In this document: one piece after another, positions 163-17,166 of the stretch
How the letters are laid out: each line of letters starts with the position of its first letter
Numbering within the stretch: position 1 is the first letter of the stretch
IMG/VR virus record: IMGVR_UViG_3300032307_000369
Span: 124,001-188,000 of that record
Length of the DNA: 64,000 nt
Direction: 5' to 3' (one strand)
Translations under genes and position numbers: made by a program
The notes under the pieces: generated by a model
The model's database searches: none
Told to the model about the DNA's origin: nothing
The model's input: the letters and a program-made list of their open reading frames with translations, nothing else

Positions 163-522
163 ATGATTAAAAACATCACTCCTTCTGGTAGATATATACA
201 GGTAACTGGTGGCAACGCCAGTACCTATATAAATGGTTATCCTGGAGCACAAGGTGTTGGCAATATGCGTTTTAATACTTCTAATCAAAACATGGAAGTA
301 TTTGATGGCAGTAATTGGATTATGCTCAACATGGATTATGTTAGTGTAGGTTTAAATGGAGAAGCAGAATCATTGTTAGACTGGGCACGTAAAAAGCGTG
401 ATGAAGAGATGGAAATACAAGCTCTTGCCCAAACTAATCCTGCTGTTAAAAATGCATTAGAAGCTGTTGAACGAGCAAAAGAACAATTAAAAATAATAAA
501 GGAATTATCAATTGAGCACTAA
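163..522 (+). CDS. hypothetical protein
   Basis: 119-aa ORF preceded by CTAAATA; contains GNMRFNTSNQNMEVFDGSNW. Confidence 0.75.
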   Translation: MIKNITPSGRYIQVTGGNASTYINGYPGAQGVGNMRFNTSNQNMEVFDGSNWIMLNMDYVSVGLNGEAESLLDWARKKRDEEMEIQALAQTNPAVKNALEAVERAKEQLKIIKELSIEH

Positions 523-2041
523 TCGTATCAATTATACAGAAACACAAAGAGACTATGCTGTGTACTTGCCAGCTATTAGTAGCTTCTATACTAAAATGGT
601 TAGTGACACACGTCATAATCACAAAAGTGGTGTAGAGCCAGCAAGGATGCCTAAAGGGTTTGAGCATGGTATTGAATCTATGAACTTTTTAGATGCTGAA
701 CGTGGAGCATTTACATACAAATATGGATTGTATTCAGCAGGTCATGCGCAACTTGATTTAGATAAAACTATGCTTCGAGATGCTATGGTGCAAGAGCGTG
801 ACCGAGACAACACAATTATTTTAGGTGACTCAGGCGGTTTCCAAATTGGTAAAGGTGTATTAAAGTTTGATTGGCAAGATTTTAAAGGCAAAGGTGCTAA
901 TAAAACTCGTGATCAAATTTTAAATTGGTTAGAGCTTACTGCTAACTGGAGTATGGTACTCGACGTGCCCACATGGGCAAGTAATGATTTACATCGTGAA
1001 AAAACTGGTTTGAATAATTTTCAAGATTGCTTAGATGCAACTATTTGGAATAATAATTATTTCGCACAGAATCGTCTAGGTAATACAAAATTTTTAAACG
1101 TGTTACAAGGTAACAGTTTAGAAGAAGCTGACATTTGGTATGATGCTGTTAAACATTTGCCATTTGAAGGTTGGGCAATGGGCTCACAGAACATGTGTAA
1201 TATGCCAATTATTTTGCATAGACTAATAACAATGCGTGATGAAGGCATGCTAGAAGGCAAAGATTGGATACACTTCTTAGGTACTGCTCCATTAGACTGG
1301 GCTTGCTACTTAACAAGTATACAACGTCAATTGCGTAAGCATTGCAATCCTAACATCACTGTTAGTTTTGACTGTGCAAGTCCTTACATTGCAGTAGCAT
1401 ATGGTCTTTCATATACAGACCCAAGTTTCCGTAGAGATAAATGGTCAATTTTGATGGAAAAAGCTCCAGATAATAAAATTTGGGCAGGTGATACCATACC
1501 ATTCCCATGGCGCAGTGCTATTGGCAATCGTTTGACTATGGGAGATGTTTGTTATTATAAACCTGGCGACTTAAACAAAGTTGGCAAAGAAGGTAAAACT
1601 AGTTGGGATAGTTTTAGTTATGGCTTGTACATGGCACATAATACTGAAGTACACATCCAAGCTGTGCAACGTGCTAATCAACTGATGGATATGGAAGTGG
1701 CACGTTATAAACCAGATTGGAGATACTGGCGTAAACTTAACGAACGAGAAGAAAAAAGTGATAGCCCAAGTGAATGGGTTCCTCGAAATATTCTATACTT
1801 TGATCGTTTTGTTCAAGAATTATTTGAAAGCGACGATCCACGCACAATGTTAAAACATGCACACAATTTCTTAACCGAATTGCAAGGCGGATTACAGCGT
1901 GGCAAAACTGGCAACGATGTTAAAAATCGTGTTATTAATGCAGTGTTTGATTTTGGTGAAGACACAATCCCATCAAATGAAGAATTAACTGACATGAACG
2001 ATGAAAAAATTGTTGCTCTTGAATCTACTTTGGATGATTGA
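512..2041 (+). CDS. dpdA: TGT-family guanine transglycosylase, DpdA-like (inserts 7-deazaguanine into DNA)
   Basis: DSGGFQ catalytic motif, MVLDVP, NVLQG, IHFLG and SFDCAS motifs of the TGT barrel. Clustered with folE, queE and a queD-like gene. TTG start. Confidence 0.8.
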   Translation: MSTNRINYTETQRDYAVYLPAISSFYTKMVSDTRHNHKSGVEPARMPKGFEHGIESMNFLDAERGAFTYKYGLYSAGHAQLDLDKTMLRDAMVQERDRDNTIILGDSGGFQIGKGVLKFDWQDFKGKGANKTRDQILNWLELTANWSMVLDVPTWASNDLHREKTGLNNFQDCLDATIWNNNYFAQNRLGNTKFLNVLQGNSLEEADIWYDAVKHLPFEGWAMGSQNMCNMPIILHRLITMRDEGMLEGKDWIHFLGTAPLDWACYLTSIQRQLRKHCNPNITVSFDCASPYIAVAYGLSYTDPSFRRDKWSILMEKAPDNKIWAGDTIPFPWRSAIGNRLTMGDVCYYKPGDLNKVGKEGKTSWDSFSYGLYMAHNTEVHIQAVQRANQLMDMEVARYKPDWRYWRKLNEREEKSDSPSEWVPRNILYFDRFVQELFESDDPRTMLKHAHNFLTELQGGLQRGKTGNDVKNRVINAVFDFGEDTIPSNEELTDMNDEKIVALESTLDD

Positions 2042-2056
2042 TTTATCCAATTTCCA

Positions 2057-2085
2057 TTGACTTTATCAAAGGTATAGTTTATACT
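2057..2085 (+). promoter_or_regulatory. sigma70-type promoter
   Basis: TTGACT-N17-TATACT; ATG at 2092. Confidence 0.7.
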
Positions 2086-2091
2086 AGTTTT

Positions 2092-2604
2092 ATGCTTAAC
2101 ACACAAGAACGTCAAGAAGTAACATATTTTACTGGGTACGAAGTTGAACATACCATTTGTCATGGTATGAAAACTTTGTTTGTGGTAGGAACTCCGCCAC
2201 TTGAAGATATCCTGTACAAAGCAATTCAAACTGATTGCAAACATATCTATTTTGGTACTAGTCAGAGTTTTAATCCAAAAGCTATCAGTCATGAAGAATA
2301 CAAAGCATGGGATGATGTTATTGTGGGCTGTTTGAAAGCAGACTACTGGGTTACATTAGACTTTGGTGTTGAACACATTGAAGGTGTATTGGAATCCTGT
2401 TACAGTGAATATCCTCGCTTTGTTCCTATGATTAGTGTTAAGTTACCTTACATTAATCAACTCAACTACAATGCCACACTTAAATTGGATGATAGAACTT
2501 GGGGTGCTACTAATCCAGGTGTGTGGACACATCAACTACATGACCTAATGAGTAAAGACAAGTATACTTATTGGGATCAATACACTCAAGATACACCAAC
2601 ATGA
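2092..2604 (+). CDS. hypothetical protein of the deazaguanine cluster
   Basis: Open frame. Start moved to ATG 2092, downstream of the promoter. Stop overlaps the next start (ATGA). Confidence 0.7.
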   Translation: MLNTQERQEVTYFTGYEVEHTICHGMKTLFVVGTPPLEDILYKAIQTDCKHIYFGTSQSFNPKAISHEEYKAWDDVIVGCLKADYWVTLDFGVEHIEGVLESCYSEYPRFVPMISVKLPYINQLNYNATLKLDDRTWGATNPGVWTHQLHDLMSKDKYTYWDQYTQDTPT

Positions 2605-2990
2605 AAATTAAACATGACATCCGTCCTAATAAAATGATTTGGGTTACTTTTCGCAAAGAAGGTATTCACAAATATCCTGCCGCACTTACAGATCCATCAC
2701 TTGCAACAGGTGATGAATATGATGTAAGTTTCCTAGGCTATCCGCATCGTCACATCTTCCACTTTAAAGTATGGATTGGTGTTACACACGATGATCGCGA
2801 TATTGAATTTATCCAGTTTAAACGCTGGTTGGAAAAACTGTATGCAGAAGGTACACTCCAACTAGACTACAAGAGTTGCGAAATGATGTCAGGTGATTTA
2901 TATGACGTCATTAGCAAGAAGTATCCTAATCGTGAGATTTGGATTGAGGTCTCCGAAGATGGAGAAAATGGTTCTTTTATCAAGTATTAA
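2601..2990 (+). CDS. QueD/PTPS-like T-fold protein (DpdL-like)
   Basis: LGYPHRHIFHF (LxxxHRHxF) metal-binding motif, SCEMM and IEVSEDGENG; next to dpdA. Confidence 0.75.
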   Translation: MKIKHDIRPNKMIWVTFRKEGIHKYPAALTDPSLATGDEYDVSFLGYPHRHIFHFKVWIGVTHDDRDIEFIQFKRWLEKLYAEGTLQLDYKSCEMMSGDLYDVISKKYPNREIWIEVSEDGENGSFIKY

Positions 2991-3010
2991 CATTTTAAGG
3001 AAATTATAAA

Positions 3011-3250
3011 ATGGCGCAACCTGCATGGCTTAACAAATATCTAACTATGAAGCCTGAAGTAACTAAGATCTTTGATGATCTTGAAGCCTGGCACGATCAT
3101 TGCCGATTGGAGCTAATCAATTTTAACCCAGCAGACATGTATAAGTCTGATGTTTATCGCGACTGGAATCGTCGTAAAAATAGCAAACCACGTCATTTTA
3201 AAAATGACTTTAATCGTAACAACAATTATAAAAAGCCATATCGTCAATGA
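3011..3250 (+). CDS. hypothetical protein with basic C-terminus
   Basis: 79-aa ORF with AAGGA SD. Confidence 0.7.
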   Translation: MAQPAWLNKYLTMKPEVTKIFDDLEAWHDHCRLELINFNPADMYKSDVYRDWNRRKNSKPRHFKNDFNRNNNYKKPYRQ

Positions 3251-4332
3251 TATACATTGTTGATTTAGAAGCAGTTGAAACAAGGTACACGGGGCAATGG
3301 AAGCACCATGTACCTGAACTCTTACGAAAGGCAGGACACAATGTTCAAATTATATCTGGCCCTACGGATATCCCTTCTGCAACCACTCCTGGCGCTTTTC
3401 TTAATTTTGGTGGTACCAATATATACAAAGCTAGTCAAGTGGAGCAATTGGGCCGTTTATTTTGTAGCGGAGCCATTCATCCCGGTGATCACTTTATTTT
3501 TACTGATGCTTGGCATCCGGGCATTATAAACTTAAAGTACATGAGTGAGTTACTGGGTATTCCAGTAACAACACATGGCTTGTGGCATGCAGGTAGTTAT
3601 GATCCGCAAGACTTCTTAGGTCGTCTTGTCGGTGACAAGCCTTGGGTCAGACATGCTGAGAAAAGTTTTTTCCATTCGTTTGATCACAATTACTTTGCTA
3701 CAGACTTTCACATTGACTTGTTTATTAAAAATCTGTTTGAGATTAAACGTGAAGTATTTGTCAAACATCAAATTGATGAATATGTAGCAAGTGGAAAGAT
3801 AGTACGCTCAGGATGGCCCATGGAATATATGGACGGAACATTAACAATGTATAAGAATATGCCCAAGCGTGATCTTATCCTGTTCCCTCATCGAATTGCT
3901 CCAGAGAAGCAGGTTGAAATCTTTAGAGATCTAAAAGAACACTTGCCACAATATGAATTTGTAGTATGCCAAGATCAGCAATTAACAAAAAATGAATATC
4001 ATAATTTGTTAGGCGAAGCAAAGATGGTATTCAGTGCTAACCTACAAGAAACACTGGGTATTAGTTGTTACGAAGGCGCAGTAGTAGACGCTATTCCCAT
4101 GGTGCCTGATAGACTAAGCTATAGTGAAATGTACTATGACATTTTCAAATATCCAAGTATATGGACTGAAAGTTTTGAATCTTATCAAGCACATCGTCCA
4201 AATTTGTGTTTTGCAATTATGCAACACATGGATCATTATGAAACTAGATTGCCAAAACTAAAAAGTCAAACTATTGATTTAACTAACAACTTCTTCAGTG
4301 CAGGTAAATTAATTGAGCAACTCAAACAATAG
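3247..4332 (+). CDS. GT-B fold glycosyltransferase (GT4-like)
   Basis: FPHRIAPEKQ and SANLQETLGISCYEG (ExxGxxxxE) motifs. Confidence 0.8.
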   Translation: MIYIVDLEAVETRYTGQWKHHVPELLRKAGHNVQIISGPTDIPSATTPGAFLNFGGTNIYKASQVEQLGRLFCSGAIHPGDHFIFTDAWHPGIINLKYMSELLGIPVTTHGLWHAGSYDPQDFLGRLVGDKPWVRHAEKSFFHSFDHNYFATDFHIDLFIKNLFEIKREVFVKHQIDEYVASGKIVRSGWPMEYMDGTLTMYKNMPKRDLILFPHRIAPEKQVEIFRDLKEHLPQYEFVVCQDQQLTKNEYHNLLGEAKMVFSANLQETLGISCYEGAVVDAIPMVPDRLSYSEMYYDIFKYPSIWTESFESYQAHRPNLCFAIMQHMDHYETRLPKLKSQTIDLTNNFFSAGKLIEQLKQ

Positions 4333-4891
4333 AACGATTGTAGAAGAAAATGACGTATTTAAAAAATATAATTTTTCTTCTATAATATCTCCGCAAGATG
4401 AATCACTTGCAAAACAAGACATCAAAAATATAATTGAAAGTGGAAACTATTTTAAAAATAGTCCAAAGTTTCAAACCTCTGAAAATGTGTTTGCTAGAAC
4501 TGAACAACATTGGCTTAAACTTCGAATGAGTTTTATTTTTAGTTGTTTTATGTATTTGGGCAAAGAAGTTCAAATTAAAAATATGCAAGCATGGAGTTTC
4601 ATGACCAATAATGACATTGTTGAAGATCGTGATGATCTTTGGCACACCCATCATTTGACCAAAGAAAATAATTCTTTATCTGCAATTTATTATTTGCATA
4701 TACCAAATGATGCTGTATATATGCTAAGTGGTACTGAGTTTGCTCCTAACGGAGTTAAAGAGCAGGAACGTTTGGTAGTAACCCCCGCTAGTCAAAGTTG
4801 GCTAGTTTATCCCAGTGACCAATGGCACAGACCGATGCCACCTCAATCAAAAGAGTATCGGTTTATTGTTGCCGCAGATATGGAGTATTAA
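4313..4891 (+). CDS. putative 2OG-Fe(II) oxygenase
   Basis: WHTH...SAIYYLHIP...GTEF...YPSDQWH...RFIVAAD pattern of a DSBH oxygenase. Confidence 0.6.
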   Translation: MSNSNNRTIVEENDVFKKYNFSSIISPQDESLAKQDIKNIIESGNYFKNSPKFQTSENVFARTEQHWLKLRMSFIFSCFMYLGKEVQIKNMQAWSFMTNNDIVEDRDDLWHTHHLTKENNSLSAIYYLHIPNDAVYMLSGTEFAPNGVKEQERLVVTPASQSWLVYPSDQWHRPMPPQSKEYRFIVAADMEY

Positions 4892-4892
4892 T

Positions 4893-5207
4893 ATGAAATG
4901 GTTTGATAAATGGATTATGAAAAAAGCAGAGAACATTATGCGAAAGGACAGGGAAGTTGATAGTGGGCTTGTACCATATAACCTAGCTTCTACTAAACAA
5001 ATTAGACCTATAGAAGTTTCTGATTCATTGGACACTAGGGCTGTAAAATTCAAAATGTACAAAGCCAGTGGCGGTACCATTATTGAAACAGCTATGTACG
5101 ATGATAGAAAAGACAGACACAATATTAGTTTATATGTTATTACCAATGACAAGGATTTAGGCAGTGAAATTGGTAAAATCATAACTATGGAAAGTTTAAA
5201 AGTTTGA
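4893..5207 (+). CDS. hypothetical protein
   Basis: ATG 4893 directly follows the upstream stop, with GGAG SD. Confidence 0.7.
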   Translation: MKWFDKWIMKKAENIMRKDREVDSGLVPYNLASTKQIRPIEVSDSLDTRAVKFKMYKASGGTIIETAMYDDRKDRHNISLYVITNDKDLGSEIGKIITMESLKV

Positions 5208-5233
5208 CATATGATCCTAAATAATGTTATAAT
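5204..5233 (+). promoter_or_regulatory. sigma70 promoter with embedded late-type TAAATA box (folE)
   Basis: TTGACA-N18-TATAAT with extended TG; CCTAAATAAT lies in the spacer. Confidence 0.7.
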
Positions 5234-5259
5234 TAACTTGTTTAGTATAGGAATCAATA

Positions 5260-6009
5260 ATGACATCAAAAAATAATGAAACAGGCTTAGACGCAATGGC
5301 AGGCGATGGCGGATATAAAGAAGCATATCTAGCAGATGTAATTCGCTTTAAAATGAAACGTGATCAAAAACGTTTTTGGGCAGGTGACAATGTATCAGAT
5401 TATGTCACTGAAGAAATGAAACACAAGCTCATTGACGAAGCAACTGAAGCATTTGAACTAGTACTAGATCGATTGCTTATTGATCGAGAAAATGATCCTA
5501 ACTCGCATGGTACAGCCCGCCGACTGGCTAAAATGTACTTTAATGAAATAATGGCAGGAAGATATGAACCAGCACCAGATTGTACAGCATTTCCAAATGA
5601 CTCGGCGGACCGTTATGAGGGTATGTTGGTTGTTCGTAGTGAGCTTCGCAGTATGTGTAGCCATCATCACCAACCCGTTGCTGGCGTTGCTTATATTGGC
5701 ATTATTGCTGCCGAGAAACTCATTGGACTCAGCAAATACACACGCATCGCACAGTGGTGTGCAAGACGAGGTACTCTCCAGGAGGAACTTTGTAATGACA
5801 TTGCTAGGGAGATCCAAAAAGCAACAAACTCCCAAAACGTAGCAGTCTACATTCAAGCCACACATGGTTGCTGTGAGAATCGCGGCATTATGGCTCACAG
5901 TTCATTAACACAAACAACTGTACTAACTGGTACGTTTAAAACTGATCCAGGAGCGAAAAAAGAATTTTTTGATAACATTAAATTACAACAAGAGTTTGCT
6001 CCTAGATGA
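5260..6009 (+). CDS. folE: GTP cyclohydrolase I
   Basis: SMCSHH, IGLSKYTR, LQEE and HGCCENRG motifs. Confidence 0.95.
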   Translation: MTSKNNETGLDAMAGDGGYKEAYLADVIRFKMKRDQKRFWAGDNVSDYVTEEMKHKLIDEATEAFELVLDRLLIDRENDPNSHGTARRLAKMYFNEIMAGRYEPAPDCTAFPNDSADRYEGMLVVRSELRSMCSHHHQPVAGVAYIGIIAAEKLIGLSKYTRIAQWCARRGTLQEELCNDIAREIQKATNSQNVAVYIQATHGCCENRGIMAHSSLTQTTVLTGTFKTDPGAKKEFFDNIKLQQEFAPR

Positions 6010-6182
6010 ATTTAGACTTTGAAACACAAAACAAATACTATTTAGAATACAACATCAAAGCAGTAGAGTTAGGTGTAATGTGTAATCAGTATCCTGCGCT
6101 TCAAAAAGCGTGGGATCAATTTAAAACCGTTTACGAACTTTGTAAGGAAGAAAGCGATGAAGATTACCAGTCATTTCCTTAA
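6006..6182 (+). CDS. small hypothetical protein (58 aa, absent from ORF track)
   Basis: ATGA overlap with folE stop. Reads MNLDFETQNKYYLEYNIKAVELGVMCNQYPALQKAWDQFKTVYELCKEESDEDYQSFP. Confidence 0.65.
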   Translation: MNLDFETQNKYYLEYNIKAVELGVMCNQYPALQKAWDQFKTVYELCKEESDEDYQSFP

Positions 6183-6642
6183 TTGGTTAGATAAGAGAGG
6201 AAGAAAGCGTATTGTTATGGATCGTCAAAGTGATGACCCGTATTTAGAACGCTATTATTTGTTTTTAAAAGACAGAGATAATTTTCCTTTTAACGTATTC
6301 TTACACAAGTTTTTAAAAGGTGATCCTGACGATGTTCATGATCATCCATGGCCTTATGCTACACTGATACTCAAAGGTGGATACTACGAATGGATTCCAC
6401 AATTTAACTCAGATGGTACTAAAAGTTGTGAAGTACGCAAATGGCGTGGTCCTGGGCATTTCCGCATTTGTAGTCCAAACAGTTATCATCGCATCGAGCT
6501 AAAAGAAGGTGTAACAGCATGGACACTGTTTATGCCTGGACCTAAAAAACGTGATTGGGGATTTTTAGTTAATAACAAATGGATCCAACACGAACAATAC
6601 CTTAAGGAAAGATATGAGCAAGCGCATAATAACATACACTGA
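6157..6642 (+). CDS. cupin-fold protein
   Basis: HDHPW...LILKGGYYE...HRIEL...WTLF cupin motifs. Confidence 0.75.
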   Translation: MKITSHFLNWLDKRGRKRIVMDRQSDDPYLERYYLFLKDRDNFPFNVFLHKFLKGDPDDVHDHPWPYATLILKGGYYEWIPQFNSDGTKSCEVRKWRGPGHFRICSPNSYHRIELKEGVTAWTLFMPGPKKRDWGFLVNNKWIQHEQYLKERYEQAHNNIH

Positions 6643-7168
6643 ATTTAAAAATTTAGTTAGTAGTCTGTGCAGACAAATAACTCTTAGCGAGTGGAAACCA
6701 GACTACATTGTTGGCATTAGTAGAGGTGGCCTACTACCAGCAGTTATGATCAGTCATTATCTAAATGTTCCAATGCGACCATTGCAAGTAAGTTTACGAG
6801 ATGGTGGCGAATGCGTTAGCGATTTAGGTATGGCTGAAGATGCTTATGGGTATGTTAATATAGAAGACAGAGAATTCAATGATGGCGAATCTAGTAACGT
6901 ATTGTCTAGAAAAAACATACTAATAGTAGACGACATTAATGACCAGGGTAACACAGTCAATTGGATTTTAAATGATTGGCCTAGTGGTTGTATGCCTAAC
7001 GACAAGTCCTGGGAAACTGTTTGGAACAACAATGTAAAATTTGCAGTCTTATTTGATAACTTGGCAAGTAAAGCATCTATTAAAATGGACTTTGCAGGAG
7101 AAGAAATTAATAAATCTGTAAACGATGTATGGATTGAATTTCCTTACGAAGAATGGTGGACAAAATGA
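6614..7168 (+). CDS. purine phosphoribosyltransferase (Gpt/XGPRT-like)
   Basis: IVGISRGGLLPA, PRPP-binding ILIVDDINDQGNT, and WIEFPYE C-terminus. Confidence 0.85.
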   Translation: MSKRIITYTEFKNLVSSLCRQITLSEWKPDYIVGISRGGLLPAVMISHYLNVPMRPLQVSLRDGGECVSDLGMAEDAYGYVNIEDREFNDGESSNVLSRKNILIVDDINDQGNTVNWILNDWPSGCMPNDKSWETVWNNNVKFAVLFDNLASKASIKMDFAGEEINKSVNDVWIEFPYEEWWTK

Positions 7169-7563
7169 CCGACTTATATAAAGTAGTTCTAACTGAACCA
7201 GCATTTATAGAAGATTCAAAAAATGCACCGTGGGATAATTTGATTGAGGAAGACTTTCACGTTAAAGTATTTGCAGACAAATATCCAGTTACAGAAGGAC
7301 ACTTGTTGTTTATACCAAAGTATAATACTACACATGTTTTAGCAGACGCTATGAACGATGCTGTTCAACTAGGAATAAAAAAAGTACAGGCAGGTGAATG
7401 GGATGGATTTAATGTAGGGCTCAATATAGGGTTGGCTGCAGGACAAACTGTAGATTGGCCACACGTACATTTAATCCCAAGACGTAAGGGTGACATGGAA
7501 GATCCAACAGGCGGAGTACGTCACGTCATTCCAGAAAAAGGTAATTATAGGAAAACAAAATGA
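7165..7563 (+). CDS. HIT family nucleotide hydrolase
   Basis: DKYPVTEGHLLFIPK and AGQTVDWPHVHLIPR. Confidence 0.9.
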   Translation: MTDLYKVVLTEPAFIEDSKNAPWDNLIEEDFHVKVFADKYPVTEGHLLFIPKYNTTHVLADAMNDAVQLGIKKVQAGEWDGFNVGLNIGLAAGQTVDWPHVHLIPRRKGDMEDPTGGVRHVIPEKGNYRKTK

Positions 7564-7763
7564 AAAATCAAATCGTTGAAACACTAGAACAACACTTTGA
7601 AGCACACATTCGTAAGCACAAAATGAATGTAGATATTATGTTAGCAAACCCAATGGCTATTCATGATCACACCGATCTAATGGATGCTATTGAAAAAGAA
7701 GTTGCGCAAATTGCAGAGTACATGGATAAACTAGAAGTAATGGAAAAATACTTTAAGGATTAA
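7560..7763 (+). CDS. hypothetical protein
   Basis: 67-aa helical ORF, translationally coupled to the upstream gene. Confidence 0.7.
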   Translation: MKNQIVETLEQHFEAHIRKHKMNVDIMLANPMAIHDHTDLMDAIEKEVAQIAEYMDKLEVMEKYFKD

Positions 7764-7765
7764 TT

Positions 7766-7954
7766 ATGAAGTGTCAAACTTGTGGTAACGAATATAGTAC
7801 AACGTGTGATTATAGGCAAGGAAGATGTCCACATCATGCCTCAATGTCTTCGCAAATATTGGCTAGCCCTTATTACACAAGATACATAAACTTGTTTAAA
7901 TCTATCAAAAACTTTTTTACAAAAGGTGACTGCGATTGCGGTCATAAACACTGA
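7766..7954 (+). CDS. small Cys-rich hypothetical protein
   Basis: CxxC...C...CPHH; AAGGA SD. Confidence 0.6.
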   Translation: MKCQTCGNEYSTTCDYRQGRCPHHASMSSQILASPYYTRYINLFKSIKNFFTKGDCDCGHKH

Positions 7955-7955
7955 C

Positions 7956-8474
7956 ATGGCTCAATTATTTCGAATAACTCCTTTAGAAAAGAAAAACATT
8001 GAATTTTACGTTGATGTTTATGAAACATTACCTAATGGCGATATTAGAGGATTTATTGTTAGTGAGTGGTATCGTTGGGGTCAAGGTTTTCGTGAGCTAG
8101 ATGATCCTGTATTAGACTACGGTAACGGAGTAAATTCTATATATTGTAGCACTAATATTGGTTGGGGTTGTGAGCTTGACGATTTGTGTTCTGTATATGT
8201 TGAATTTCAAGGCGAGTTTACCGACGATGAAAAAGAAGAAATTGAAAAACGATGTCGTGGTGACTTAGAAGATGATGATGGACGTTGGGGTACTTCTTGG
8301 ATATTTGACGGTGATCATAATTGGCAAGTTGAAGATGACGGGGTTTTAATTTATGGTCCAGTAAAAATTGACCTTGTTGATGAAGATGCTTATAACGAAG
8401 TCATTAAAGAAGACATAGGTATGGAAAAATATCAACCTACTGCTTGGCCATTTAGTGACAAAAAAGATGAGTGA
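7956..8474 (+). CDS. acidic hypothetical protein
   Basis: Open frame; ATG 7956. Confidence 0.7.
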   Translation: MAQLFRITPLEKKNIEFYVDVYETLPNGDIRGFIVSEWYRWGQGFRELDDPVLDYGNGVNSIYCSTNIGWGCELDDLCSVYVEFQGEFTDDEKEEIEKRCRGDLEDDDGRWGTSWIFDGDHNWQVEDDGVLIYGPVKIDLVDEDAYNEVIKEDIGMEKYQPTAWPFSDKKDE

Positions 8475-8667
8475 TGCTACCGTAAAAATTGATTGGGACA
8501 ATCAAAATGGCTTTTGGTGGAATGAAACCTGTGCTATGGTATTAGAAGTGTTTGGGTTACCTGGAGATCGATATACAAGTCACCCTAAAGAAGATGCCAT
8601 GTTTTTCATTTTTAATAATGTAAAGGATGCAGACCTATGTCGGATATTACTAAGCGAGAGATTGTAA
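8467..8667 (+). CDS. hypothetical protein
   Basis: Short ORF within the operon. Confidence 0.6.
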   Translation: MSDATVKIDWDNQNGFWWNETCAMVLEVFGLPGDRYTSHPKEDAMFFIFNNVKDADLCRILLSERL

Positions 8668-8855
8668 AAATATCATTATTTGCCTTTATTGCTATTATTG
8701 CGATGTTTGCATCAATATATTACAGTATTCCAAAAAAAGGCGATGTAATCAAAATTGATTGTAGACTATCAGAAATAAGTCCAGATATTCCAATTTGGGC
8801 AAAACAAGAATGTCGTAAAAAACAGTTAGAATTGTTTGACAAACAACCTAAATAA
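8637..8855 (+). CDS. small membrane protein
   Basis: One hydrophobic segment (ISLFAFIAIIAMFASIYY) and a Cys pair. Confidence 0.6.
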   Translation: MSDITKREIVKISLFAFIAIIAMFASIYYSIPKKGDVIKIDCRLSEISPDIPIWAKQECRKKQLELFDKQPK

Positions 8856-8864
8856 TAGTATAAT
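8836..8864 (+). promoter_or_regulatory. consensus sigma70 promoter with embedded late-type TAAATA box (queE)
   Basis: TTGACA-N17-TATAAT; CCTAAATAAT lies in the spacer. Confidence 0.8.
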
Positions 8865-8886
8865 GAAGTATAAATTGGAATCACAT

Positions 8887-9792
8887 ATGGAAAAAATTAG
8901 ATACAGTGAAATGTTTTATAGCGTACAAGGCGAAGGTCGCTTTGTAGGAGTGCCCAGTGTTTTCTTTAGAACGTTTGGTTGCAACTTTGAATGTCGCGGT
9001 TTTGGACAAGAAAGAGGTAACTTTATACCTATTGAACAAATGCCACACAACAATGATCCTAGAGCCAATCCTGATCATCCAGAAGCATATAAGAGTTTTG
9101 AAGAACTGCCAGTTAGTAATATTGGGTGCGATACTAGTGCCAGCTGGAGTGCAAAATATAAACACTTGGCTACTTGGGATACCGTAGATGTTATTGCTGA
9201 CAAGCTAACTGCAATGACTCCAGAAGGAAAATGGACATGTGATAACGGTCAGGATGTACATCTTGTTATTACTGGCGGTGAGCCTTTAATGTGGCAAAAG
9301 CAATTGGCGGCTTTATTAAAACAACCGCAATTTAAAGACATTAAAAATGTAACATTTGAAACAAATACAACACATGAACTAAAACAAGAATTTATCCAAA
9401 TGATGCTGGATCTTGGTTTTGGTCCTACTCGAGATCCAAATTACTTTGTTAAGTTTACTTGGAGTTGCAGTCCTAAATTGACTAGTTCTGGAGAGGCATG
9501 GGACGAAGCAATTAAGCCAGAAGTAGCGGCTCAATACTATGGATTACCTGGTAGGAACTTTTATTTTAAATTTGTTGTAACTGATGAACAAGATGTTTTA
9601 GAAGTTGAAAAGGCCATTGAACTGTATAAAGAAAAAGAAATTTTTTGTGATGTTTATTTGATGCCTTGTGGTGCTACGCAAGAAGGACAAGCTAAAACTG
9701 CACGTCAAGTTGCAGAACTATGTTTACAAAAAGGTTTTAGATTTAGTCCAAGATTGCACGTAGACTTGTTTGGTAATGCATGGGGGACTTAA
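8887..9792 (+). CDS. queE: 7-carboxy-7-deazaguanine synthase (radical SAM)
   Basis: FYSVQGEG, RTFGCNFEC...GCDT, VITGGEP, ETN, SPK and RFSPRLH motifs. Confidence 0.9.
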   Translation: MEKIRYSEMFYSVQGEGRFVGVPSVFFRTFGCNFECRGFGQERGNFIPIEQMPHNNDPRANPDHPEAYKSFEELPVSNIGCDTSASWSAKYKHLATWDTVDVIADKLTAMTPEGKWTCDNGQDVHLVITGGEPLMWQKQLAALLKQPQFKDIKNVTFETNTTHELKQEFIQMMLDLGFGPTRDPNYFVKFTWSCSPKLTSSGEAWDEAIKPEVAAQYYGLPGRNFYFKFVVTDEQDVLEVEKAIELYKEKEIFCDVYLMPCGATQEGQAKTARQVAELCLQKGFRFSPRLHVDLFGNAWGT

Positions 9793-12706: not shown

Positions 12707-13792
12707 ATGGCAAAGAGCGAAATTAGTGCAAATCGTACAGTCACCCCTAACGAGGCTAAAAAGTCACTACGCAAGTGTGTGTCTAAAAAGCGTCCAATTT
12801 TTATGTGGGGAGCGCCTGGTATTGGCAAATCCGACATTGTTCGACAAATTGCAGCCGAAGATGGTCGTGAGGTGATTGACGTTCGACTTCCTCTTTGGGA
12901 GCCTACTGATATCAAAGGTATCCCTTATTACAATGCTACAGAAAACACAATGAGCTGGGCTCCTCCCGCAGAGTTGCCTAGTGATAAAAATAGCACTGCT
13001 ATTTTGTTTTTGGACGAGCTTAATGCGGCTCCGCCAAGCGTACAGGCTGCGGCTTATCAGTTGATTTTGAATCGCCGTGTAGGTACTTATGTACTTCCAG
13101 AAGGTGTTAGCATTGTTGCCGCAGGTAACCGTGAAACTGATAAAGGTGTTACATATCGTATGCCAGCCCCGTTGGCAAATCGTTTTGTTCACTTGGAATT
13201 GCGTGTAGACTTTGATGACTGGAATCAGTGGGCTACTTCAAATAAAGTACACAAAGACGTTGCTGGTTATCTAAACTATGCAAAACAAGACTTGTATGAC
13301 TTTGATCCTAAATCCGCAAGTCGTGCATTTGCTACACCACGTAGCTGGTCTTTTGTTAGTGAGCTTCTTGAAGACGAAGACACTGATGACGGTACTATTA
13401 CTGACTTGGTTGCAGGTGCTGTTGGTGAAGGTCTTGCTGTTAAGTTTATGGCACACCGTAAAATTTCTGGTCAGTTGCCTAATCCATCAGAAATCCTTGA
13501 TGGTAAAGTAAAAGAGTTGAAAATTAAAGAAATTTCAGCAATGTATTCTTTGACCATTGGCATGTGCTATGAGCTTGACGAGCGTCATAACAAGAAAGCT
13601 AAAGATTGGGATGGCATGGCAGACAATTTCTTCCGTTTTATGATGGACAATTTCCCAACAGAAATTGTTGTTATGGGCGCAAAGACTGCTCTTACCAACT
13701 TCCAACTGCCTTTTGATCCTGCTGAAATGAAGAACTTTGATGAGTTCCATGATCGATTTGGCAAGTACGTTATTACTGCCCTTGAAAAATAA
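12707..13792 (+). CDS. MoxR-like AAA+ ATPase
   Basis: Walker A GAPGIGKS, Walker B LFLDE, AAGN, arginine finger LANRF, and TPRSW. Confidence 0.9.
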   Translation: MAKSEISANRTVTPNEAKKSLRKCVSKKRPIFMWGAPGIGKSDIVRQIAAEDGREVIDVRLPLWEPTDIKGIPYYNATENTMSWAPPAELPSDKNSTAILFLDELNAAPPSVQAAAYQLILNRRVGTYVLPEGVSIVAAGNRETDKGVTYRMPAPLANRFVHLELRVDFDDWNQWATSNKVHKDVAGYLNYAKQDLYDFDPKSASRAFATPRSWSFVSELLEDEDTDDGTITDLVAGAVGEGLAVKFMAHRKISGQLPNPSEILDGKVKELKIKEISAMYSLTIGMCYELDERHNKKAKDWDGMADNFFRFMMDNFPTEIVVMGAKTALTNFQLPFDPAEMKNFDEFHDRFGKYVITALEK

Positions 13793-13806
13793 GTGCAAAA
13801 AATAAC

Positions 13807-13835
13807 AAAGAAGGGGCTTAAATGCCCTTTCTTTT
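13807..13835 (+). terminator. intrinsic terminator
   Basis: AAAGAAGGGGC-TTAAAT-GCCCTTTCTTTT. Confidence 0.7.
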
Positions 13836-13836
13836 A

Positions 13837-13865
13837 TAGACTTTTAACAAGATTCGTGCTATAAT
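13837..13865 (+). promoter_or_regulatory. sigma70 promoter
   Basis: TAGACT-N17-TATAAT with extended TG. Confidence 0.7.
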
Positions 13866-13894
13866 ATGCTATATAATTGAAAGAAAGGTTGTAT

Positions 13895-15169
13895 ATGTCC
13901 TCAACTATTATGAAAGACGAAAACAATAAAAAAGTTTTCGAAAAGCGAGAACACAGCACAAAAGAGAAAAATGATGCTGTAGAAAAACTTATTACCGCTA
14001 GAGTTGGACTTTTACTACGACAACCATTTTTTGGTAATTTAGCAACACGCCTGCAACTAATTGATGCTAGCGATTGGTGTCCTACTGCCGCAACTGATGG
14101 TCGTAATTTTTATTACAATATTGACTTTATTAAATCACTGAGTGCAAAACAATGTGAATTCCTTTTTGGTCACGAAACACTACATAATGTGTTTGACCAC
14201 CTAACACGTCGTTTAGATAGAGATCCAAAGTTTTTTAACTATGCTTGTGACTTTGCTGTTAATCAAATTTTGATTGACGAACGCATTGGTGAGAAAATTG
14301 ATCAAGTAAAAATTTGTTATGACTCAAAATATCGAGGTAAGAGCTCTGAAGAAATTTATGACGACTTGATGAAGAATGTCAAATTTATGAGTGCTGAAGA
14401 ACTCCTTAAGCAGTTGGGCGAGTTACTTGACGAACATATGGATTGGGACGAAGACGGTGATCCTAGAGATGGCGAAAGTAATGGCGATAAGGATGGAAAA
14501 GGTGCTCCTAAATATAGCAAAGAAGAACTGAAAAAAATTCGAGATGAATTAAAAGAAGCAATGGTTGCCGCCGCACAGGCAGCTGGCGCTGGTCGAGTCC
14601 CAGTGGGTGTCCAGAGACTCCTTAAAGACCTTACAGAGCCAAAAATGGATTGGCGTCAATTGTTGCGTATGAATATTCAAAGTATTCTTCGTAGCAATTA
14701 TAGCTTTATGCGTCCAAGTCGAAAAGGATGGCATACTGGGGCGGTTTTGCCAGGTATGCTTAATGATGAAACTATTGATATCTGTATTGGTATTGATATG
14801 TCTGGTTCAATTGGTGATGCACAAGCCAAAGACTTCTTAAGTGAAGTTAAAGGAATTATGGACGAATATGTAGACTATAATATCCAACTTTGGTGCTTTG
14901 ATACAGAAGTATATAACTATGCCAAATTTAGTGCCGATAACGGCCAAGATTTAGACTCTTATGAAATTAAGGGCGGTGGCGGTACTGACTTTGACTGCAA
15001 TTATAACTTCATGAAAGATCAAGGAATTGAACCTAAGAAATTTGTAATGTTTACTGACGGATATCCCTGCGGAAGCTGGGGAGATGAAGACTACTGTGAT
15101 ACATTGTTCATTATTCACGGTTCGGAAGATATAAAATCTCCATTCGGTCAGTACGCACATTATAAATAA
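13895..15169 (+). CDS. metallopeptidase-like plus VWA domain protein (DUF2201-like)
   Basis: TAATDG, HETLH (HExxH), MIDAS DMSGS, GGGGTDF and FTDG motifs. Confidence 0.85.
   Translation: MSSTIMKDENNKKVFEKREHSTKEKNDAVEKLITARVGLLLRQPFFGNLATRLQLIDASDWCPTAATDGRNFYYNIDFIKSLSAKQCEFLFGHETLHNVFDHLTRRLDRDPKFFNYACDFAVNQILIDERIGEKIDQVKICYDSKYRGKSSEEIYDDLMKNVKFMSAEELLKQLGELLDEHMDWDEDGDPRDGESNGDKDGKGAPKYSKEELKKIRDELKEAMVAAAQAAGAGRVPVGVQRLLKDLTEPKMDWRQLLRMNIQSILRSNYSFMRPSRKGWHTGAVLPGMLNDETIDICIGIDMSGSIGDAQAKDFLSEVKGIMDEYVDYNIQLWCFDTEVYNYAKFSADNGQDLDSYEIKGGGGTDFDCNYNFMKDQGIEPKKFVMFTDGYPCGSWGDEDYCDTLFIIHGSEDIKSPFGQYAHYK
15161..15168 (+). promoter_or_regulatory. T4-type late promoter
   Basis: Exact TATAAATA upstream of ATG 15185. 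Confidence 0.7.
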
Positions 15170-16379: not shown

Positions 16380-16691
16380 TTGGATGCAAATTGGCGGGAG
16401 ATTTTGGAAGACGTATCTTTACGTGCTATCCCGATTAAATACATTGCAAGCGTAGAACTTGAACTCAAAAACCAAGACACTTGTTCTATAGATGTGGCAT
16501 CTAAGTTACGTGACGATTGGGCAAGCAACTTAGAAACCGCCTCACTAGAATTAGAAAAACTAATTGGCGATGTCCATGAACTACACGGCGTTAGCATGGT
16601 CGAATACCTGCTAGATTTTGACATGATAAGGAGTGAGGTAAGTTTTACCTCAGCAAAATTAGGAAATGACAACAACAGCAATCGTAATTAG
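16380..16691 (+). CDS. hypothetical protein (start uncertain)
   Basis: Fills the gap before DHFR; the frame is open from 16311. Confidence 0.6.
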   Translation: MDANWREILEDVSLRAIPIKYIASVELELKNQDTCSIDVASKLRDDWASNLETASLELEKLIGDVHELHGVSMVEYLLDFDMIRSEVSFTSAKLGNDNNSNRN

Positions 16692-17166
16692 TACAGAAGT
16701 AGGCGGTATTGGTATCAATGGCCGTATGCCTTGGCTTGAATTATATTCAGCTAAGGATGCCTATCAAGAACTTGCCAAAAATAATATAGTTTTAGTTGGT
16801 CGAAAATCTTTTGACTCGCACCACCATTTGCGTGGAGAAGTAACCTATGTCTACTCTAATAATGTAGATTTAGAAGAAAGCGACAGTGTAAAAAGAGTTT
16901 CAGGATCTGCTGATGACATCATTAGTATGATTAAAGAAACACACCCAGATAAAAACATTATTATTGCAGGTGGTGTAAATGTGTTCAAAGCATTTTGGGA
17001 CCATATTGATGAATGGCGTGTGACCATTATTAAAGAGTTTGTAGTGTACGAAGAAGATATTGATTTAACTTCTATCCAATACCATTGGAACGACAGACGT
17101 CTACTTGGTGAAGGTGTAGATAATAATCAAAATTTTGAAATTTGGCATTACCGTAAGAAGGTCTAA
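16666..17166 (+). CDS. frd: dihydrofolate reductase-like protein (divergent)
   Basis: IGINGRMPW, VLVGRKSF and IIAGG motifs; coupled to thyA. Confidence 0.75.
   Translation: MTTTAIVISTEVGGIGINGRMPWLELYSAKDAYQELAKNNIVLVGRKSFDSHHHLRGEVTYVYSNNVDLEESDSVKRVSGSADDIISMIKETHPDKNIIIAGGVNVFKAFWDHIDEWRVTIIKEFVVYEEDIDLTSIQYHWNDRRLLGEGVDNNQNFEIWHYRKKV

What the first reader, a model, noticed from the sequence alone, without database searches (positions are those of the whole stretch)
2601..2990. The only QueD-like gene has the LxxxHRHxF signature rather than a canonical QueD site
Seen: LGYPHRHIF, without the usual CxxxHGH of QueD. From memory, LxxxHRHxF is the signature reported for DpdL, the predicted CDG decarboxylase that yields plain 7-deazaguanine; this needs confirming. 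If so, the canonical QueD step is encoded elsewhere or by the host. Plain 7-deazaguanine has no obvious handle for the neighbouring glycosyltransferase, so the chemistry is unresolved.
Basis: partly seen in the sequence, partly recalled or inferred. Interest (0 to 1): 0.6.

Follow-up and report, generated by a model that had tools for sequence, protein, structure and literature searches.

The report
DpdL-type QueD paralogue in phage
The gene belongs to DpdL, a known but biochemically unproven phage family thought to strip the carboxyl group from a 7-deazaguanine precursor; it lies in a DNA-modification gene island whose conserved sugar-transferase neighbour hints at a modified guanine not yet described.

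Summary
ORF 2601-2990 (+, 129 aa) carries LGYPHRHIF at nt 2733-2759 and has no CxxxHGH.

- **Family:** Cui et al. 2023 (PMC10516641) give LxxxHRHxF as the DpdL signature. The protein matches both DpdL proteins tested there: ACP17 gp125 at 57% and phiST CGPG_00067 at 32%.
- **Fold:** The AlphaFold2 model (pLDDT 92.6) is closest to E. coli QueD. The three zinc histidines and the base-anchoring glutamates are kept. The catalytic Cys is Leu, and the Asp-His dyad has no counterpart.
- **"Only QueD-like gene":** This is true for the window only. The same 245.5-kb virus record has a Pfam-PTPS QueD 53 kb upstream. No QueC was found there or in five large relatives.
- **What was added:** The neighbouring glycosyltransferase has a GT4 (GT-B) fold and is a conserved partner. 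It lies next to DpdL in PA5oct, ACP17, Phosso and X1. It tracks a long TGT-like DpdA: 38 loci with both, 10 with neither, 2 with GT only, 0 with DpdA only.

DpdL activity has never been shown and the glycosyl acceptor is unknown. Verdict: a new member of a known kind, with a testable lead to a possibly glycosylated 7-deazaguanine.

The parts
2601..2990 (+). DpdL-family T-fold protein (QueD paralogue), 129 aa; the finding itself
   Evidence: 57% identical to ACP17 gp125 and 32% to phiST CGPG_00067. AlphaFold2 pLDDT 92.6; Foldseek top hits are E. coli QueD 4ntk/4ntm/3qna with TM 0.62-0.72. 1927 50%-identity clusters match at E<=1e-3.
2733..2759 (+). LGYPHRHIF motif, residues 45-53. L45 takes the place of the QueD catalytic Cys27; H49 and H51 match the zinc ligands His31 and His33.
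   Evidence: Read directly from the sequence. hhalign of the DpdL profile against E. coli QueD pairs FLGYPHRHIF with KCGRLHGHSF. Conservation is shown.
512..2041 (+). Long DpdA-like DNA transglycosylase candidate (TGT superfamily), 509 aa; the true start may lie downstream
   Evidence: No Pfam TGT hit. Invariant motifs GDSGGFQ (105-111), LQG (198-200), HFLG (254-257) and FDCASP (286-291) are visible. The ESM-Atlas feature search reaches a TGT-domain cluster at 0.94. hhalign against the DpdA3-type set is weak: E 7e-4, probability 26%. 40% identical to PA5oct gp168.
2038..2604 (+). Conserved protein of unknown function ('o188'); the likely start is the Met near nt 2122. Its stop overlaps the DpdL start (ATGA).
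   Evidence: Homologue of ACP17 gp122 (32%). Present in 78/80 close and 61/80 GT-selected viral loci. Fused to DpdL in either order in the metagenomic proteins P0297 and P0314. No Pfam, PDB or Atlas lead.
3011..3250 (+). Small conserved ORF (79 aa) between DpdL and the GT, function unknown
   Evidence: No family hit. tblastn finds it in 71/80 close relatives.
3247..4332 (+). GT-B fold, GT4-like retaining-type glycosyltransferase, 361 aa; conserved partner of DpdL and the long DpdA
   Evidence: AlphaFold2 pLDDT 88.9. Foldseek and VIA-align top hits are BshA, MshA, sucrose-phosphate synthase and PglA, with Z up to 24.9. Top BFVD hit is the ACP17 'Glycosyl transferase family 1' protein, TM 0.84. 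An E-x7-E motif (QETLGISCYE) is visible. Synteny is shown.
4313..4891 (+). 2OG-Fe(II) oxygenase-like ORF, an accessory insert rather than a core part
   Evidence: Pfam 2OG-FeII_Oxy_5 at 2.8e-4, below the cut-off; phrog_81. Found in only 5/80 close relatives and 0/160 others.
5260..6009 (+). FolE, GTP cyclohydrolase I (first step, GTP to H2NTP)
   Evidence: Pfam PF01227 at 2.3e-39; phrog_2197.
6157..6642 (+). 161-aa ORF matching a PHROG annotated 'cysteine dioxygenase', role unknown
   Evidence: phrog_4786 at 6.8e-39. Found in 56/80 close and 29/80 GT-selected loci.
6614..7168 (+). Purine-type phosphoribosyltransferase
   Evidence: Pfam Pribosyltran at 7.7e-12. Homologues sit in the PA5oct and BUCT-ZZ01 clusters, the latter annotated xanthine-guanine PRTase.
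7153..7563 (+). HIT-family nucleotide hydrolase/transferase
   Evidence: NCBIfam HinT at 9.7e-13, below the cut-off.
8836..9792 (+). QueE-like radical-SAM CDG synthase
   Evidence: phrog_2076 'QueE-like radical SAM domain' at 4.5e-58; Pfam Fer4_12.

Best explanation
ORF 2601-2990 encodes a member of the DpdL family, a phage paralogue of QueD with the same T-fold.

**Active site.** It keeps the zinc site: H23, H49 and H51 match E. coli QueD His16, His31 and His33. It also keeps the residues that hold a 2-amino-4-oxopyrimidine ring: S92-C93-E94 match the PTSE motif, and E119 matches Glu110. It has lost the QueD catalytic Cys, which is Leu45, and the Asp-His dyad. So it should still bind a pterin- or 7-deazaguanine-like ligand next to a metal, but it cannot carry out the QueD reaction.

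**Genomic setting.** The gene sits in a 7-deazaguanine DNA-modification island. In order the island holds a long TGT-like DpdA, a conserved unknown protein (o188), DpdL, a GT4 glycosyltransferase, FolE, a PRTase, a HIT protein and QueE. The true QueD lies 53 kb upstream in the same genome. No QueC is present.

**Most likely pathway.** FolE, QueD and QueE make 7-carboxy-7-deazaguanine (CDG). With no QueC the route cannot continue to preQ0. DpdL acts on CDG, most probably by metal-assisted decarboxylation to 7-deazaguanine, as proposed by Cui et al. 2023. The DpdA-like enzyme then swaps the product into DNA in place of guanine. The GT4 enzyme travels with the long DpdA form, so it probably adds a sugar to the base or to the modified DNA. 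In that case the final base in this lineage may not be plain dDG.

**Shown versus inferred.** Shown here: family membership, fold, residue pattern, gene content and synteny. Inferred: the decarboxylation, the order of the steps and the sugar acceptor.
For: **Family.** tblastn hits fall on ACP17 gp125 (57%) and phiST CGPG_00067 (32%), the founding DpdLs. The motif definition comes from the paper itself.

**Fold.** AlphaFold2 pLDDT is 92.6. Foldseek's top 17 hits are all QueD/PTPS chains, led by E. coli QueD at E 5e-5 and TM 0.64-0.72.

**Residue mapping.** hhalign against E. coli QueD covers residues 9-119 against 2-116. hmmsearch against P. horikoshii PTPS 2dj6 gives the same register.

**Conservation.**

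**Pathway genes.** FolE, QueE and the PRTase are. QueD lies at G000:C1:70849-71187, with Pfam PTPS at 5.3e-13. No QueC was found in the record. None scored above the cut-off in five large relatives that are 61-90% complete, while QueD was present in four of the five.

**Precedent.** phiST carries the same gene set plus DpdL, and its G is fully replaced by dDG.

**A free-base ligand is plausible.** One metagenomic DpdL is fused to a Vut_1/YhhQ-type domain. From my own knowledge, that family transports preQ0/preQ1.

**The GT is a partner, not a bystander.**
- All 17 full-length GT homologues in 50,697 phage records are in DpdL phages.
- 78 of 78 evaluable GT-selected viral loci carry DpdL within 2.6 kb.
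- Among 50 evaluable diverse DpdL loci the split is 38 with GT and long DpdA, 2 with GT only, 0 with DpdA only and 10 with neither.
- Cyanophage BUCT-ZZ01 has two Pfam-recognised GTs flanking its DpdA-like gene and DpdL.
Against: **No DpdL has shown activity.** Cui et al. co-expressed the phiST and ACP17 dpdL genes with their dpdA genes in E. coli and detected no dDG.

**Sequence-only evidence for QueD-likeness is weak.** Pfam and NCBIfam give no hit. The PDB profile hit has E 0.08. hhalign probability is 50%.

**The Arg of HRH is not universal.** PA5oct and Ahp1 have HFHYF, so it cannot be an essential carboxylate binder.

**The substrate level is unclear.** The island's PRTase suggests chemistry on nucleotides. 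So do the kinase-like and pyrophosphatase genes of phiST and the dNMP kinase next to DpdL in Ahp1.

**Missing genes cannot be excluded.** The virus record is about 70% complete, so an absent QueC or other enzyme cannot be ruled out for this genome alone.

**The GT lead has limits.** Decarboxylated 7-deazaguanine offers no ordinary hydroxyl for a glycosyltransferase. The co-occurrence counts are not corrected for shared ancestry.
Confidence: 0.6

Rival explanations
1. DpdL works on a nucleotide, not on the free base. The island's phosphoribosyltransferase would first join CDG to PRPP. DpdL would then decarboxylate the 7-carboxy-7-deazaguanine nucleotide. The product would be phosphorylated, reduced and built into DNA by the polymerase. 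The TGT-like protein would have a minor or different role.
For: - A purine-type PRTase is a conserved island gene: it is in the window at 6614-7168, in PA5oct, and in BUCT-ZZ01 next to QueE.
- There is a precedent. Tubercidin clusters use CDG with a PRTase and a (UbiD-type) decarboxylase, and lack QueC (bioRxiv 10.64898/2026.04.15.718813).
- In phiST, DpdL sits between a MazG-like pyrophosphatase and an AAA_18 kinase-like protein.
- In Ahp1 and contig L177 a dNMP kinase lies close downstream of DpdL, and a dCTP-deaminase-like gene does so in D479 and L177; D479's own dNMP kinase is record annotation only.
- Complete replacement of G, as in phiST, is easier to explain by incorporation during replication.
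Against: - A TGT-like protein with both catalytic-Asp motifs intact is encoded right next to DpdL. Cui et al. find a DpdA in every 7-deazaguanine phage.
- One DpdL is fused to a base-transporter-type domain.
- The PRTase can equally be explained as salvage of the guanine released by base exchange. That is my inference.
- T-fold active sites of QueD type bind the base or pterin ring. Whether a ribose phosphate fits was not tested.
Confidence: 0.2
2. DpdL is not a decarboxylase. It could be a metal-dependent T-fold enzyme or binding protein that does something else in the pathway. One option is that it acts on H2NTP or a tetrahydropterin to give a different side chain, which QueE and the GT then elaborate. 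Another is that it hands the base to DpdA or the GT. In the extreme version the island makes a pterin glycoside rather than a DNA base.
For: - The only reported functional test of DpdL was negative.
- FolE, a PTPS-like protein and a GT4 enzyme also make up the cyanobacterial biopterin-glucoside route. Tetrahydrobiopterin glucosyltransferases (5zes, 9v0l) are among the structural matches of the GT, at Z about 20.5.
- The 161-aa phrog_4786 ('cysteine dioxygenase') ORF at 6157-6642 and the Cupin_2 protein next to QueD are alternative candidates for the missing chemistry.
Against: - The pteridine GTs rank no better than dozens of other GT4 enzymes.
- QueE and a TGT-like gene are core island genes, and the GT tracks the TGT-like gene. 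This points to a 7-deazaguanine placed in DNA.
- phiST has DpdL and contains dDG, which needs a decarboxylation that no other phiST gene obviously supplies.
- The zinc triad and both ring-anchoring glutamates are highly conserved, at 90% or more of sequences, as expected for a catalyst.
Confidence: 0.15
3. The ORF is simply this phage's divergent QueD (CPH4 synthase).
For: It has a QueD-like fold, retains the three zinc histidines and Glu110 equivalent, and lies in a FolE/QueE island that has no other PTPS hit inside the window.
Against: - The catalytic Cys is Leu in the window protein and in at least 90% of the aligned family sequences (invariant among the ten named-phage homologues), and QueD is inactive without that Cys.
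- The Asp-His dyad has no counterpart.
- The Pfam PTPS and TIGR QueD models do not detect it.
- A separate PTPS-family protein with Cys, Asp-His and Glu retained is encoded in the same genome and in 4 of 5 large relatives.
Confidence: 0.03

Closest known systems
DpdL (proposed CDG decarboxylase) of Cellulophaga phage phiST (CGPG_00067) and Acidovorax phage ACP17 (gp125); Cui et al., Nucleic Acids Res 2023, PMC10516641
   Same: It is homologous over the full length: 32% and 57% identity. It carries the LxxxHRHxF motif, is about 120-130 aa long and has a QueD-like fold. The phage context matches too, with FolE, QueD, QueE and a DpdA-type gene but no QueC.
   Different: Unlike phiST, this phage pairs DpdL with a 509-aa TGT-like protein (phiST's DpdA3 has 259 aa), a GT4 glycosyltransferase and the o188 protein. 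Its QueD lies 53 kb away rather than in the cluster. ACP17 does share the GT and o188. The paper's main text does not mention this partnership: the only 'glycos' match there refers to glycosidic-bond cleavage in a mass spectrum.
QueD, 6-carboxy-5,6,7,8-tetrahydropterin synthase (E. coli, PDB 4ntk/4ntm/3qn0; Pfam PF01242)
   Same: It shares the T-fold (TM 0.62-0.72), the three zinc-ligand histidines, the PTSE-like motif and the C-terminal ring-anchoring Glu.
   Different: Cys27 is replaced by Leu, Gly32 by Arg, and there is no Asp70-His71 dyad. Identity is 16-18%, and Pfam or TIGRFAM QueD models do not recognise it.
PA5oct-like Pseudomonas jumbo phages (Wroclawvirus), gp168-gp167-gp166 ... gp162
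   Same: The module has the same parts: long DpdA-like protein (40% identity), GT (40%), DpdL (56%), PRTase-like protein and QueE. In PA5oct the GT lies upstream of DpdL (gp168-gp167-gp166); in the window it lies downstream. PA5oct DNA resists several G-containing restriction sites and is targeted by END nucleases that sense hypermodified DNA (PMC12191111).
   Different: PA5oct DpdL reads HFHYF instead of HRHIF. Its modified base has not been chemically identified in the papers I could read.
GT4-family retaining glycosyltransferases (BshA, MshA, PglA; also the tetrahydrobiopterin glucosyltransferase BGluT), for the neighbouring gene
   Same: The neighbour has the two-Rossmann GT-B architecture over its whole length, with Z 20-25 and about 300 aligned residues. 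It also has an E-x7-E motif.
   Different: Identity is about 10%. Pfam GT models give no hit at E<=0.01 for the window protein. Its acceptor is unknown. It is linked to a DNA base-exchange enzyme rather than to cell-envelope or thiol pathways.

Membership tests
DpdL (Cui et al. 2023) | Sequence homology to the founding members phiST CGPG_00067 and ACP17 gp125 | tested here: met
   tblastn gives 32% identity (E 1e-6) and 57% identity (E 8e-37) over 88-92% of the query. The hits lie on exactly those CDSs.
DpdL (Cui et al. 2023) | LxxxHRHxF in place of the QueD CxxxHGH | tested here: met
   LGYPHRHIF lies at residues 45-53. It aligns with KCGRLHGHSF of E. coli QueD. The paper's wording is quoted.
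DpdL (Cui et al. 2023) | QueD-like T-fold | tested here: met
   AlphaFold2 pLDDT is 92.6. The best PDB matches are QueD/PTPS chains at E 5e-5 to 1e-3.
DpdL (Cui et al. 2023) | Phage context with DpdA, FolE, QueD and QueE but no QueC | tested here: met
   The TGT-like motifs are. QueD is elsewhere in the genome. No QueC was found in the record or above the cut-off in five large relatives. Caveat: the record is about 70% complete.
DpdL (Cui et al. 2023) | CDG decarboxylase activity, or dDG in virion DNA | not testable with these tools
   This needs biochemistry or LC-MS/MS of DNA. It is unproven even for the founding members.
QueD / PTPS (PF01242, TIGR03367) | Match to the curated family model | tested here: not met
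   No PF01242 or TIGR03367 hit, even at E up to 10 (Pfam) or 1 (NCBIfam). The genome-wide PF01242 search does not report this ORF.
QueD / PTPS (PF01242, TIGR03367) | Catalytic Cys in CxxxHGH and the Asp-His dyad | tested here: not met
   Leu45 aligns with Cys27, and the LDHH region of QueD falls in a gap.
QueD / PTPS (PF01242, TIGR03367) | Three zinc-binding histidines and the ring-anchoring Glu | tested here: met
   H23, H49 and H51 align with His16, His31 and His33, and E119 aligns with Glu110. All four are invariant or nearly so.
GT4 / GT-B glycosyltransferase (neighbour, 3247-4332) | GT-B two-domain fold with an E-x7-E motif | tested here: met
   pLDDT is 88.9. Z is 24.9 to BshA with 304 aligned residues; Foldseek gives E 4e-8. 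QETLGISCYE is visible. Pfam GT models do not reach E<=0.01.
TGT / DpdA superfamily (neighbour, 512-2041) | Match to PF01702 or to known DpdA subfamilies | tested here: inconclusive
   No PF01702 hit and no PDB sequence hit. hhalign against the DpdA3-type set gives E 7e-4 but only 26% probability. An Atlas feature search reaches a TGT-domain cluster at 0.94. The motifs DSGGFQ and FDC..P are invariant and resemble the bacterial TGT catalytic-Asp motifs; that comparison is from my own knowledge.

The most novel reading that the evidence does not exclude
The conserved set of DpdL, a long DpdA and a GT4 glycosyltransferase (with o188) may make a glycosylated 7-deazaguanine in phage DNA, a base class not yet described. 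In this reading, decarboxylation of CDG by DpdL frees the electron-rich pyrrole C7. The GT4 enzyme then attaches a sugar as a C-, N- or O-glycoside. This could happen on the free base before the enlarged DpdA inserts it, or on the DNA afterwards. The same chemistry would then explain the uncharacterised 'modified G' of PA5oct-like phages, ACP17 and Phosso, and of a very abundant uncultivated jumbo-phage lineage.
Probability: 0.3. Interest if true: 0.8.

Novelty: new member of a known kind. Interest (0 to 1): 0.5.

Why it matters
DpdL is the least understood step in phage 7-deazaguanine DNA modification. It is predicted from context only, and its one reported test was negative.

This window shows that the family is very large: 1927 clusters at 50% identity, and thousands of near-identical copies from one jumbo-phage lineage. 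In many lineages it comes as a fixed set with a GT4 glycosyltransferase, a long TGT-like enzyme and a small unknown protein.

That offers a concrete reason why dpdA plus dpdL alone gave no dDG in E. coli: partners may have been missing. It also points to cultured phages (PA5oct, ACP17, Phosso) in which a new guanine hypermodification could be looked for by mass spectrometry.

Such modifications decide whether restriction enzymes, CRISPR nucleases, DNA glycosylases and END nucleases can attack a phage. PA5oct is being studied for therapy.

Tried and rejected
**Searches that gave nothing**
- Megablast of nt 500-6100 against 50,697 phage records found no match.
- Pfam and NCBIfam scans of the ORF gave only chance frataxin hits. 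PHROGs gave only an unnamed family.

**Weak profile comparisons**
- The 10-sequence DpdL set against the phage QueD set aligned only over the C-terminal 44 columns, with 71% probability.
- PDB profile searches gave a borderline PTPS hit: E 0.37, then 0.08 with a deeper alignment. I used these only to fix the alignment register.

**Neighbour proteins**
- The long DpdA-like protein and o188 gave nothing in PDB sequence searches.
- The Atlas gave no lead for o188 (0.75).
- The Phosso 'glycosylase' upstream of its DpdL is not an o188 relative.

**Complex prediction**
- Complex prediction on DpdL plus o188 returned 'no answer', with a score of 0.00. This is evidence neither for nor against binding.

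**Context of distant DpdL representatives**
- Looking up three distant representatives gave only short contigs.

**Literature**
- The 2024 MMBR review and the supplements of Cui et al. are not held.
- No held paper describes a glycosylated 7-deazaguanine in phage DNA.

**Ideas dropped**
- The 2OG oxygenase does not supply a hydroxyl handle for the GT. It is present in only 5 of 240 related loci.
- The GT does not appear to serve a hydroxymethyl-pyrimidine. The only thymidylate-synthase-family gene scores 350 bits to the ThyA model and sits next to DHFR, so it looks like an ordinary thymidylate synthase.

**Not done**
- I built no formal tree with PTPS-III. At 16-18% identity it would add little to the profile-level separation.

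- No alternative genetic code was used.
- The big representative search was used once, because the family scans left the protein without a named family.
Full report
**1. Observation**

The + strand ORF from ATG 2601 to the stop at 2988-2990 encodes 129 aa. Residues 45-53 read LGYPHRHIF, at nt 2733-2759. There is no CxxxHGH in the protein.

The window is bases 124,001-188,000 of a 245,550-bp IMG/VR virus record, estimated about 70% complete. Megablast finds no close cultured relative.

The protein has no Pfam or NCBIfam family. Its only family match is an unnamed PHROG (phrog_17812, 8.5e-32).

**2. What it is**

Cui et al. [quoted passage not shown] They note that the Cys is needed for QueD activity. 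They also report that dpdL from phiST and ACP17, expressed with the matching dpdA, gave no dDG in E. coli.

A tblastn search of 50,697 phage records finds 28 records with a homologue. [quoted passage not shown] The best named match is Sinorhizobium jumbo phage Phosso at 72%. PA5oct-like Pseudomonas jumbo phages are at 56%.

The family is large.
They come from contigs of up to 364 kb.
- The exhaustive search of 50%-identity representatives found 1927 clusters at E<=1e-3.
- Among the best 150, L...HRH.F dominates.
- PA5oct and Aeromonas phage Ahp1 instead have HFHYF.

**3. Fold and active site**

With a 51-sequence alignment, AlphaFold2 gives pLDDT 92.6. The Foldseek top hits are E. coli QueD (4ntk, 4ntm, 3qna; TM 0.62-0.72, E from 5e-5). 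They are followed by archaeal, Pseudomonas and mammalian PTPS.

hhalign of the DpdL profile against E. coli QueD (sequence fetched) aligns residues 9-119 with 2-116. The correspondences are:

| DpdL (window) | E. coli QueD | Role in QueD |
|---|---|---|
| H23 | His16 | zinc ligand |
| L45 | Cys27 | catalytic Cys |
| H49 | His31 | zinc ligand |
| R50 | Gly32 | none known |
| H51 | His33 | zinc ligand |
| S92-C93-E94 | T-S-E of PTSE | ring binding |
| E119 | Glu110 | ring anchor |
| no counterpart | Asp70-His71 (LDHH) | catalytic dyad |

The hmmsearch alignment to P. horikoshii PTPS gives the same register. All retained positions are invariant or nearly so.

So the metal site and the pocket for a 2-amino-4-oxopyrimidine ring are kept. 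The proton-shuttling residues of QueD are gone. This fits an enzyme that binds CDG (or a pterin) at a metal, but not a CPH4 synthase.

**4. The QueD step**

A PF01242 search of the whole record finds one gene, at G000:C1:70849-71187. It is a 179-aa ORF (L001:1453-1992; Pfam 5.3e-13), 53 kb upstream of the window.

It is 41-43% identical to the annotated QueD of phiST, ACP17 and cyanophage BUCT-ZZ01. It aligns with E. coli QueD at 96% hhalign probability.

No QueC is found in the record. None scores over the cut-off in five large relatives that are 61-90% complete, while QueD is present in four of the five.

The gene set is therefore FolE + QueD + QueE + DpdL + a DpdA-type protein, without QueC. 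This is the pattern Cui et al. describe for DpdL phages.

**5. The island**

From 512 to 9792 the + strand carries these genes:
- **512-2041:** a 509-aa protein with invariant GDSGGFQ, LQG, HFLG and FDCASP motifs. These resemble the catalytic-Asp motifs of bacterial TGT (my own knowledge). An Atlas feature search gives a TGT-domain cluster, but Pfam does not detect it.
- **2038-2604:** o188, of unknown function.
- **2601-2990:** DpdL.
- **3011-3250:** a 79-aa ORF.
- **3247-4332:** the glycosyltransferase.
- **4313-4891:** a 2OG-oxygenase-like insert, present in only 5 of 240 related loci.
- **5260-6009:** FolE.
- **6157-6642:** a 161-aa ORF matching a PHROG annotated 'cysteine dioxygenase' (phrog_4786).
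- **6614-7168:** a purine-type PRTase.
- **7153-7563:** a HIT protein.
- **8836-9792:** QueE.

**6. The glycosyltransferase is a partner, not a bystander**

Its model (pLDDT 88.9) is a GT-B fold. It matches GT4 enzymes over the full length: BshA, MshA, sucrose-phosphate synthase and PglA, with Z up to 24.9. An E-x7-E motif is visible.

In named phages, full-length homologues occur only in DpdL-bearing genomes, 17 of 17 records: Phosso, eleven PA5oct-like phages, ACP17, X1, BUDD and BCSR5. In every one of these whose locus I fetched (Phosso, PA5oct, ACP17, X1), the GT lies in the cluster.

Of 80 IMG/VR contigs picked by GT similarity, 78 carry DpdL within 2.6 kb. The other two are cut off at that edge.

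I then took a deliberately more diverse set of 80 DpdL loci. Fifty of them have at least 3 kb on both sides. Of these:
- 38 have both the GT and a long DpdA-like gene;
- 2 have the GT only;
- none has the long DpdA alone;
- 10 have neither.

Fisher's test gives p = 6e-9, not corrected for shared ancestry.

Cyanophage BUCT-ZZ01 has two Pfam-recognised GTs around its DpdA-like gene and DpdL. A sewage contig and a Vut_1-DpdL fusion contig also carry a 355-376-aa gene in the cluster: directly after the fusion gene in the latter (product not identified), and about 1.4 kb downstream with a Pfam GT hit in the former.

DpdL loci without the GT (phiST, Ahp1, D479, L177) instead carry kinase, pyrophosphatase or dNMP-kinase genes nearby.

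The o188 protein is shared with ACP17 (gp122). It is fused to DpdL in either order in two metagenomic proteins. A complex prediction for DpdL plus o188 gave no verdict.

**7. Most likely mechanism**

The island makes CDG from GTP through FolE, QueD and QueE. With no QueC the route cannot go on to preQ0. DpdL acts on CDG, most probably by metal-assisted decarboxylation to 7-deazaguanine. This is the published proposal. It is supported here by the retained metal and ring-binding site and by the precedent of dDG in phiST.

The TGT-like protein then exchanges the product for guanine in DNA. The PRTase may recycle the released guanine, which is my inference.

The GT travels with the long DpdA, so it probably glycosylates the base or the modified DNA. 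The final base in this lineage may therefore not be plain dDG.

- **Shown here:** family membership, fold, residue pattern, gene content and synteny.
- **Inferred:** every chemical step.

Two rivals deserve weight. One is a nucleotide-level route, with tubercidin clusters as precedent. The other is a DpdL that does something other than decarboxylation.

**8. Comparison and novelty**

The gene meets every testable defining feature of DpdL. It fails those of QueD except the zinc triad and the Glu anchor. As a gene it is a new member of a known kind, and the family is very common.

The linkage of DpdL, a GT4 enzyme, a long DpdA and o188 was not found in the literature I could read. The main text of Cui et al. 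uses 'glycos' only for a glycosidic bond. Searches for glycosylated 7-deazaguanine found nothing relevant.

PA5oct, which carries the module, has an unidentified modified G. It is attacked by END nucleases that sense hypermodified DNA (PMC12191111). That makes the lead directly testable.

**9. Verdict**

The chemistry is still open. Interest is moderate (0.5), and it would be higher if the glycosylated-base reading proves true.

Noticed in passing
Outside the window: G000:C1:70801-71340 (L001:1453-1992): The phage QueD, like its counterparts in phiST, ACP17 and BUCT-ZZ01, keeps Cys27, Asp70-His71 and Glu110 of E. coli QueD. It replaces two of the three zinc ligands, His16 by Phe and His33 by Tyr, giving HCxxxHGY. 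DpdL shows the opposite pattern: all three His are kept, while Cys and Asp-His are lost. Whether such a QueD binds metal, or works together with DpdL, is unknown.
   Followed up: partly
Outside the window: L001:1999-2328: A 109-aa Cupin_2 protein lies directly after QueD (Pfam 3.6e-15, with weak similarity to oxalate-decarboxylase-type bicupins). QueD and this cupin were each found in 7 of 80 GT-selected loci. It is an alternative candidate for unexplained chemistry.
   Followed up: no
window 27720-41963 (-): A single open reading frame of 4747 aa. It was not analysed. The neighbouring minus-strand genes include a protein with a phage tail-collar domain (24771-27020).
   Followed up: no
window 16666-18038 (+): A dihydrofolate reductase and a thymidylate synthase lie side by side (Pfam 2.3e-14 and 9.1e-105). 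This is the only thymidylate-synthase-family gene in the record. There is therefore no sign of a hydroxymethyl-pyrimidine pathway that could feed the glycosyltransferase.
   Followed up: yes
window 12707-15169 (+): An AAA_5/MoxR-like ATPase lies next to a DUF2201 protein with a metallopeptidase-like domain and a VWA-like domain. The role of this pair here is unknown.
   Followed up: no
Metagenomic proteins P0315 and P0338 (locus L173): Two DpdL fusions turned up. In one, DpdL is fused to a Vut_1/YhhQ-type membrane domain. In the other, it is fused to a PAPS-reductase-like (PP-loop) domain. Both contigs have a 355-376-aa gene downstream of the fusion, a Pfam-recognised GT only in L173. Xanthomonas phage X1 has a separate PAPS-reductase-family gene in its cluster.
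   Followed up: partly
window 4313-4891 (+): The 2OG-Fe(II) oxygenase-like gene overlaps the end of the GT gene. It occurs in only 5 of 80 close relatives and in none of 160 more distant loci. It looks like a recent insertion.
   Followed up: yes
Whole record and relatives: This phage lineage is very abundant in metagenomes. More than 8000 database proteins match DpdL (the best 120 listed are 91-97% identical) and likewise the GT (best 120 listed 77-90%), from contigs of up to 364 kb. IMG/VR alone holds more than 590 DpdL loci. The host was not determined.
   Followed up: no
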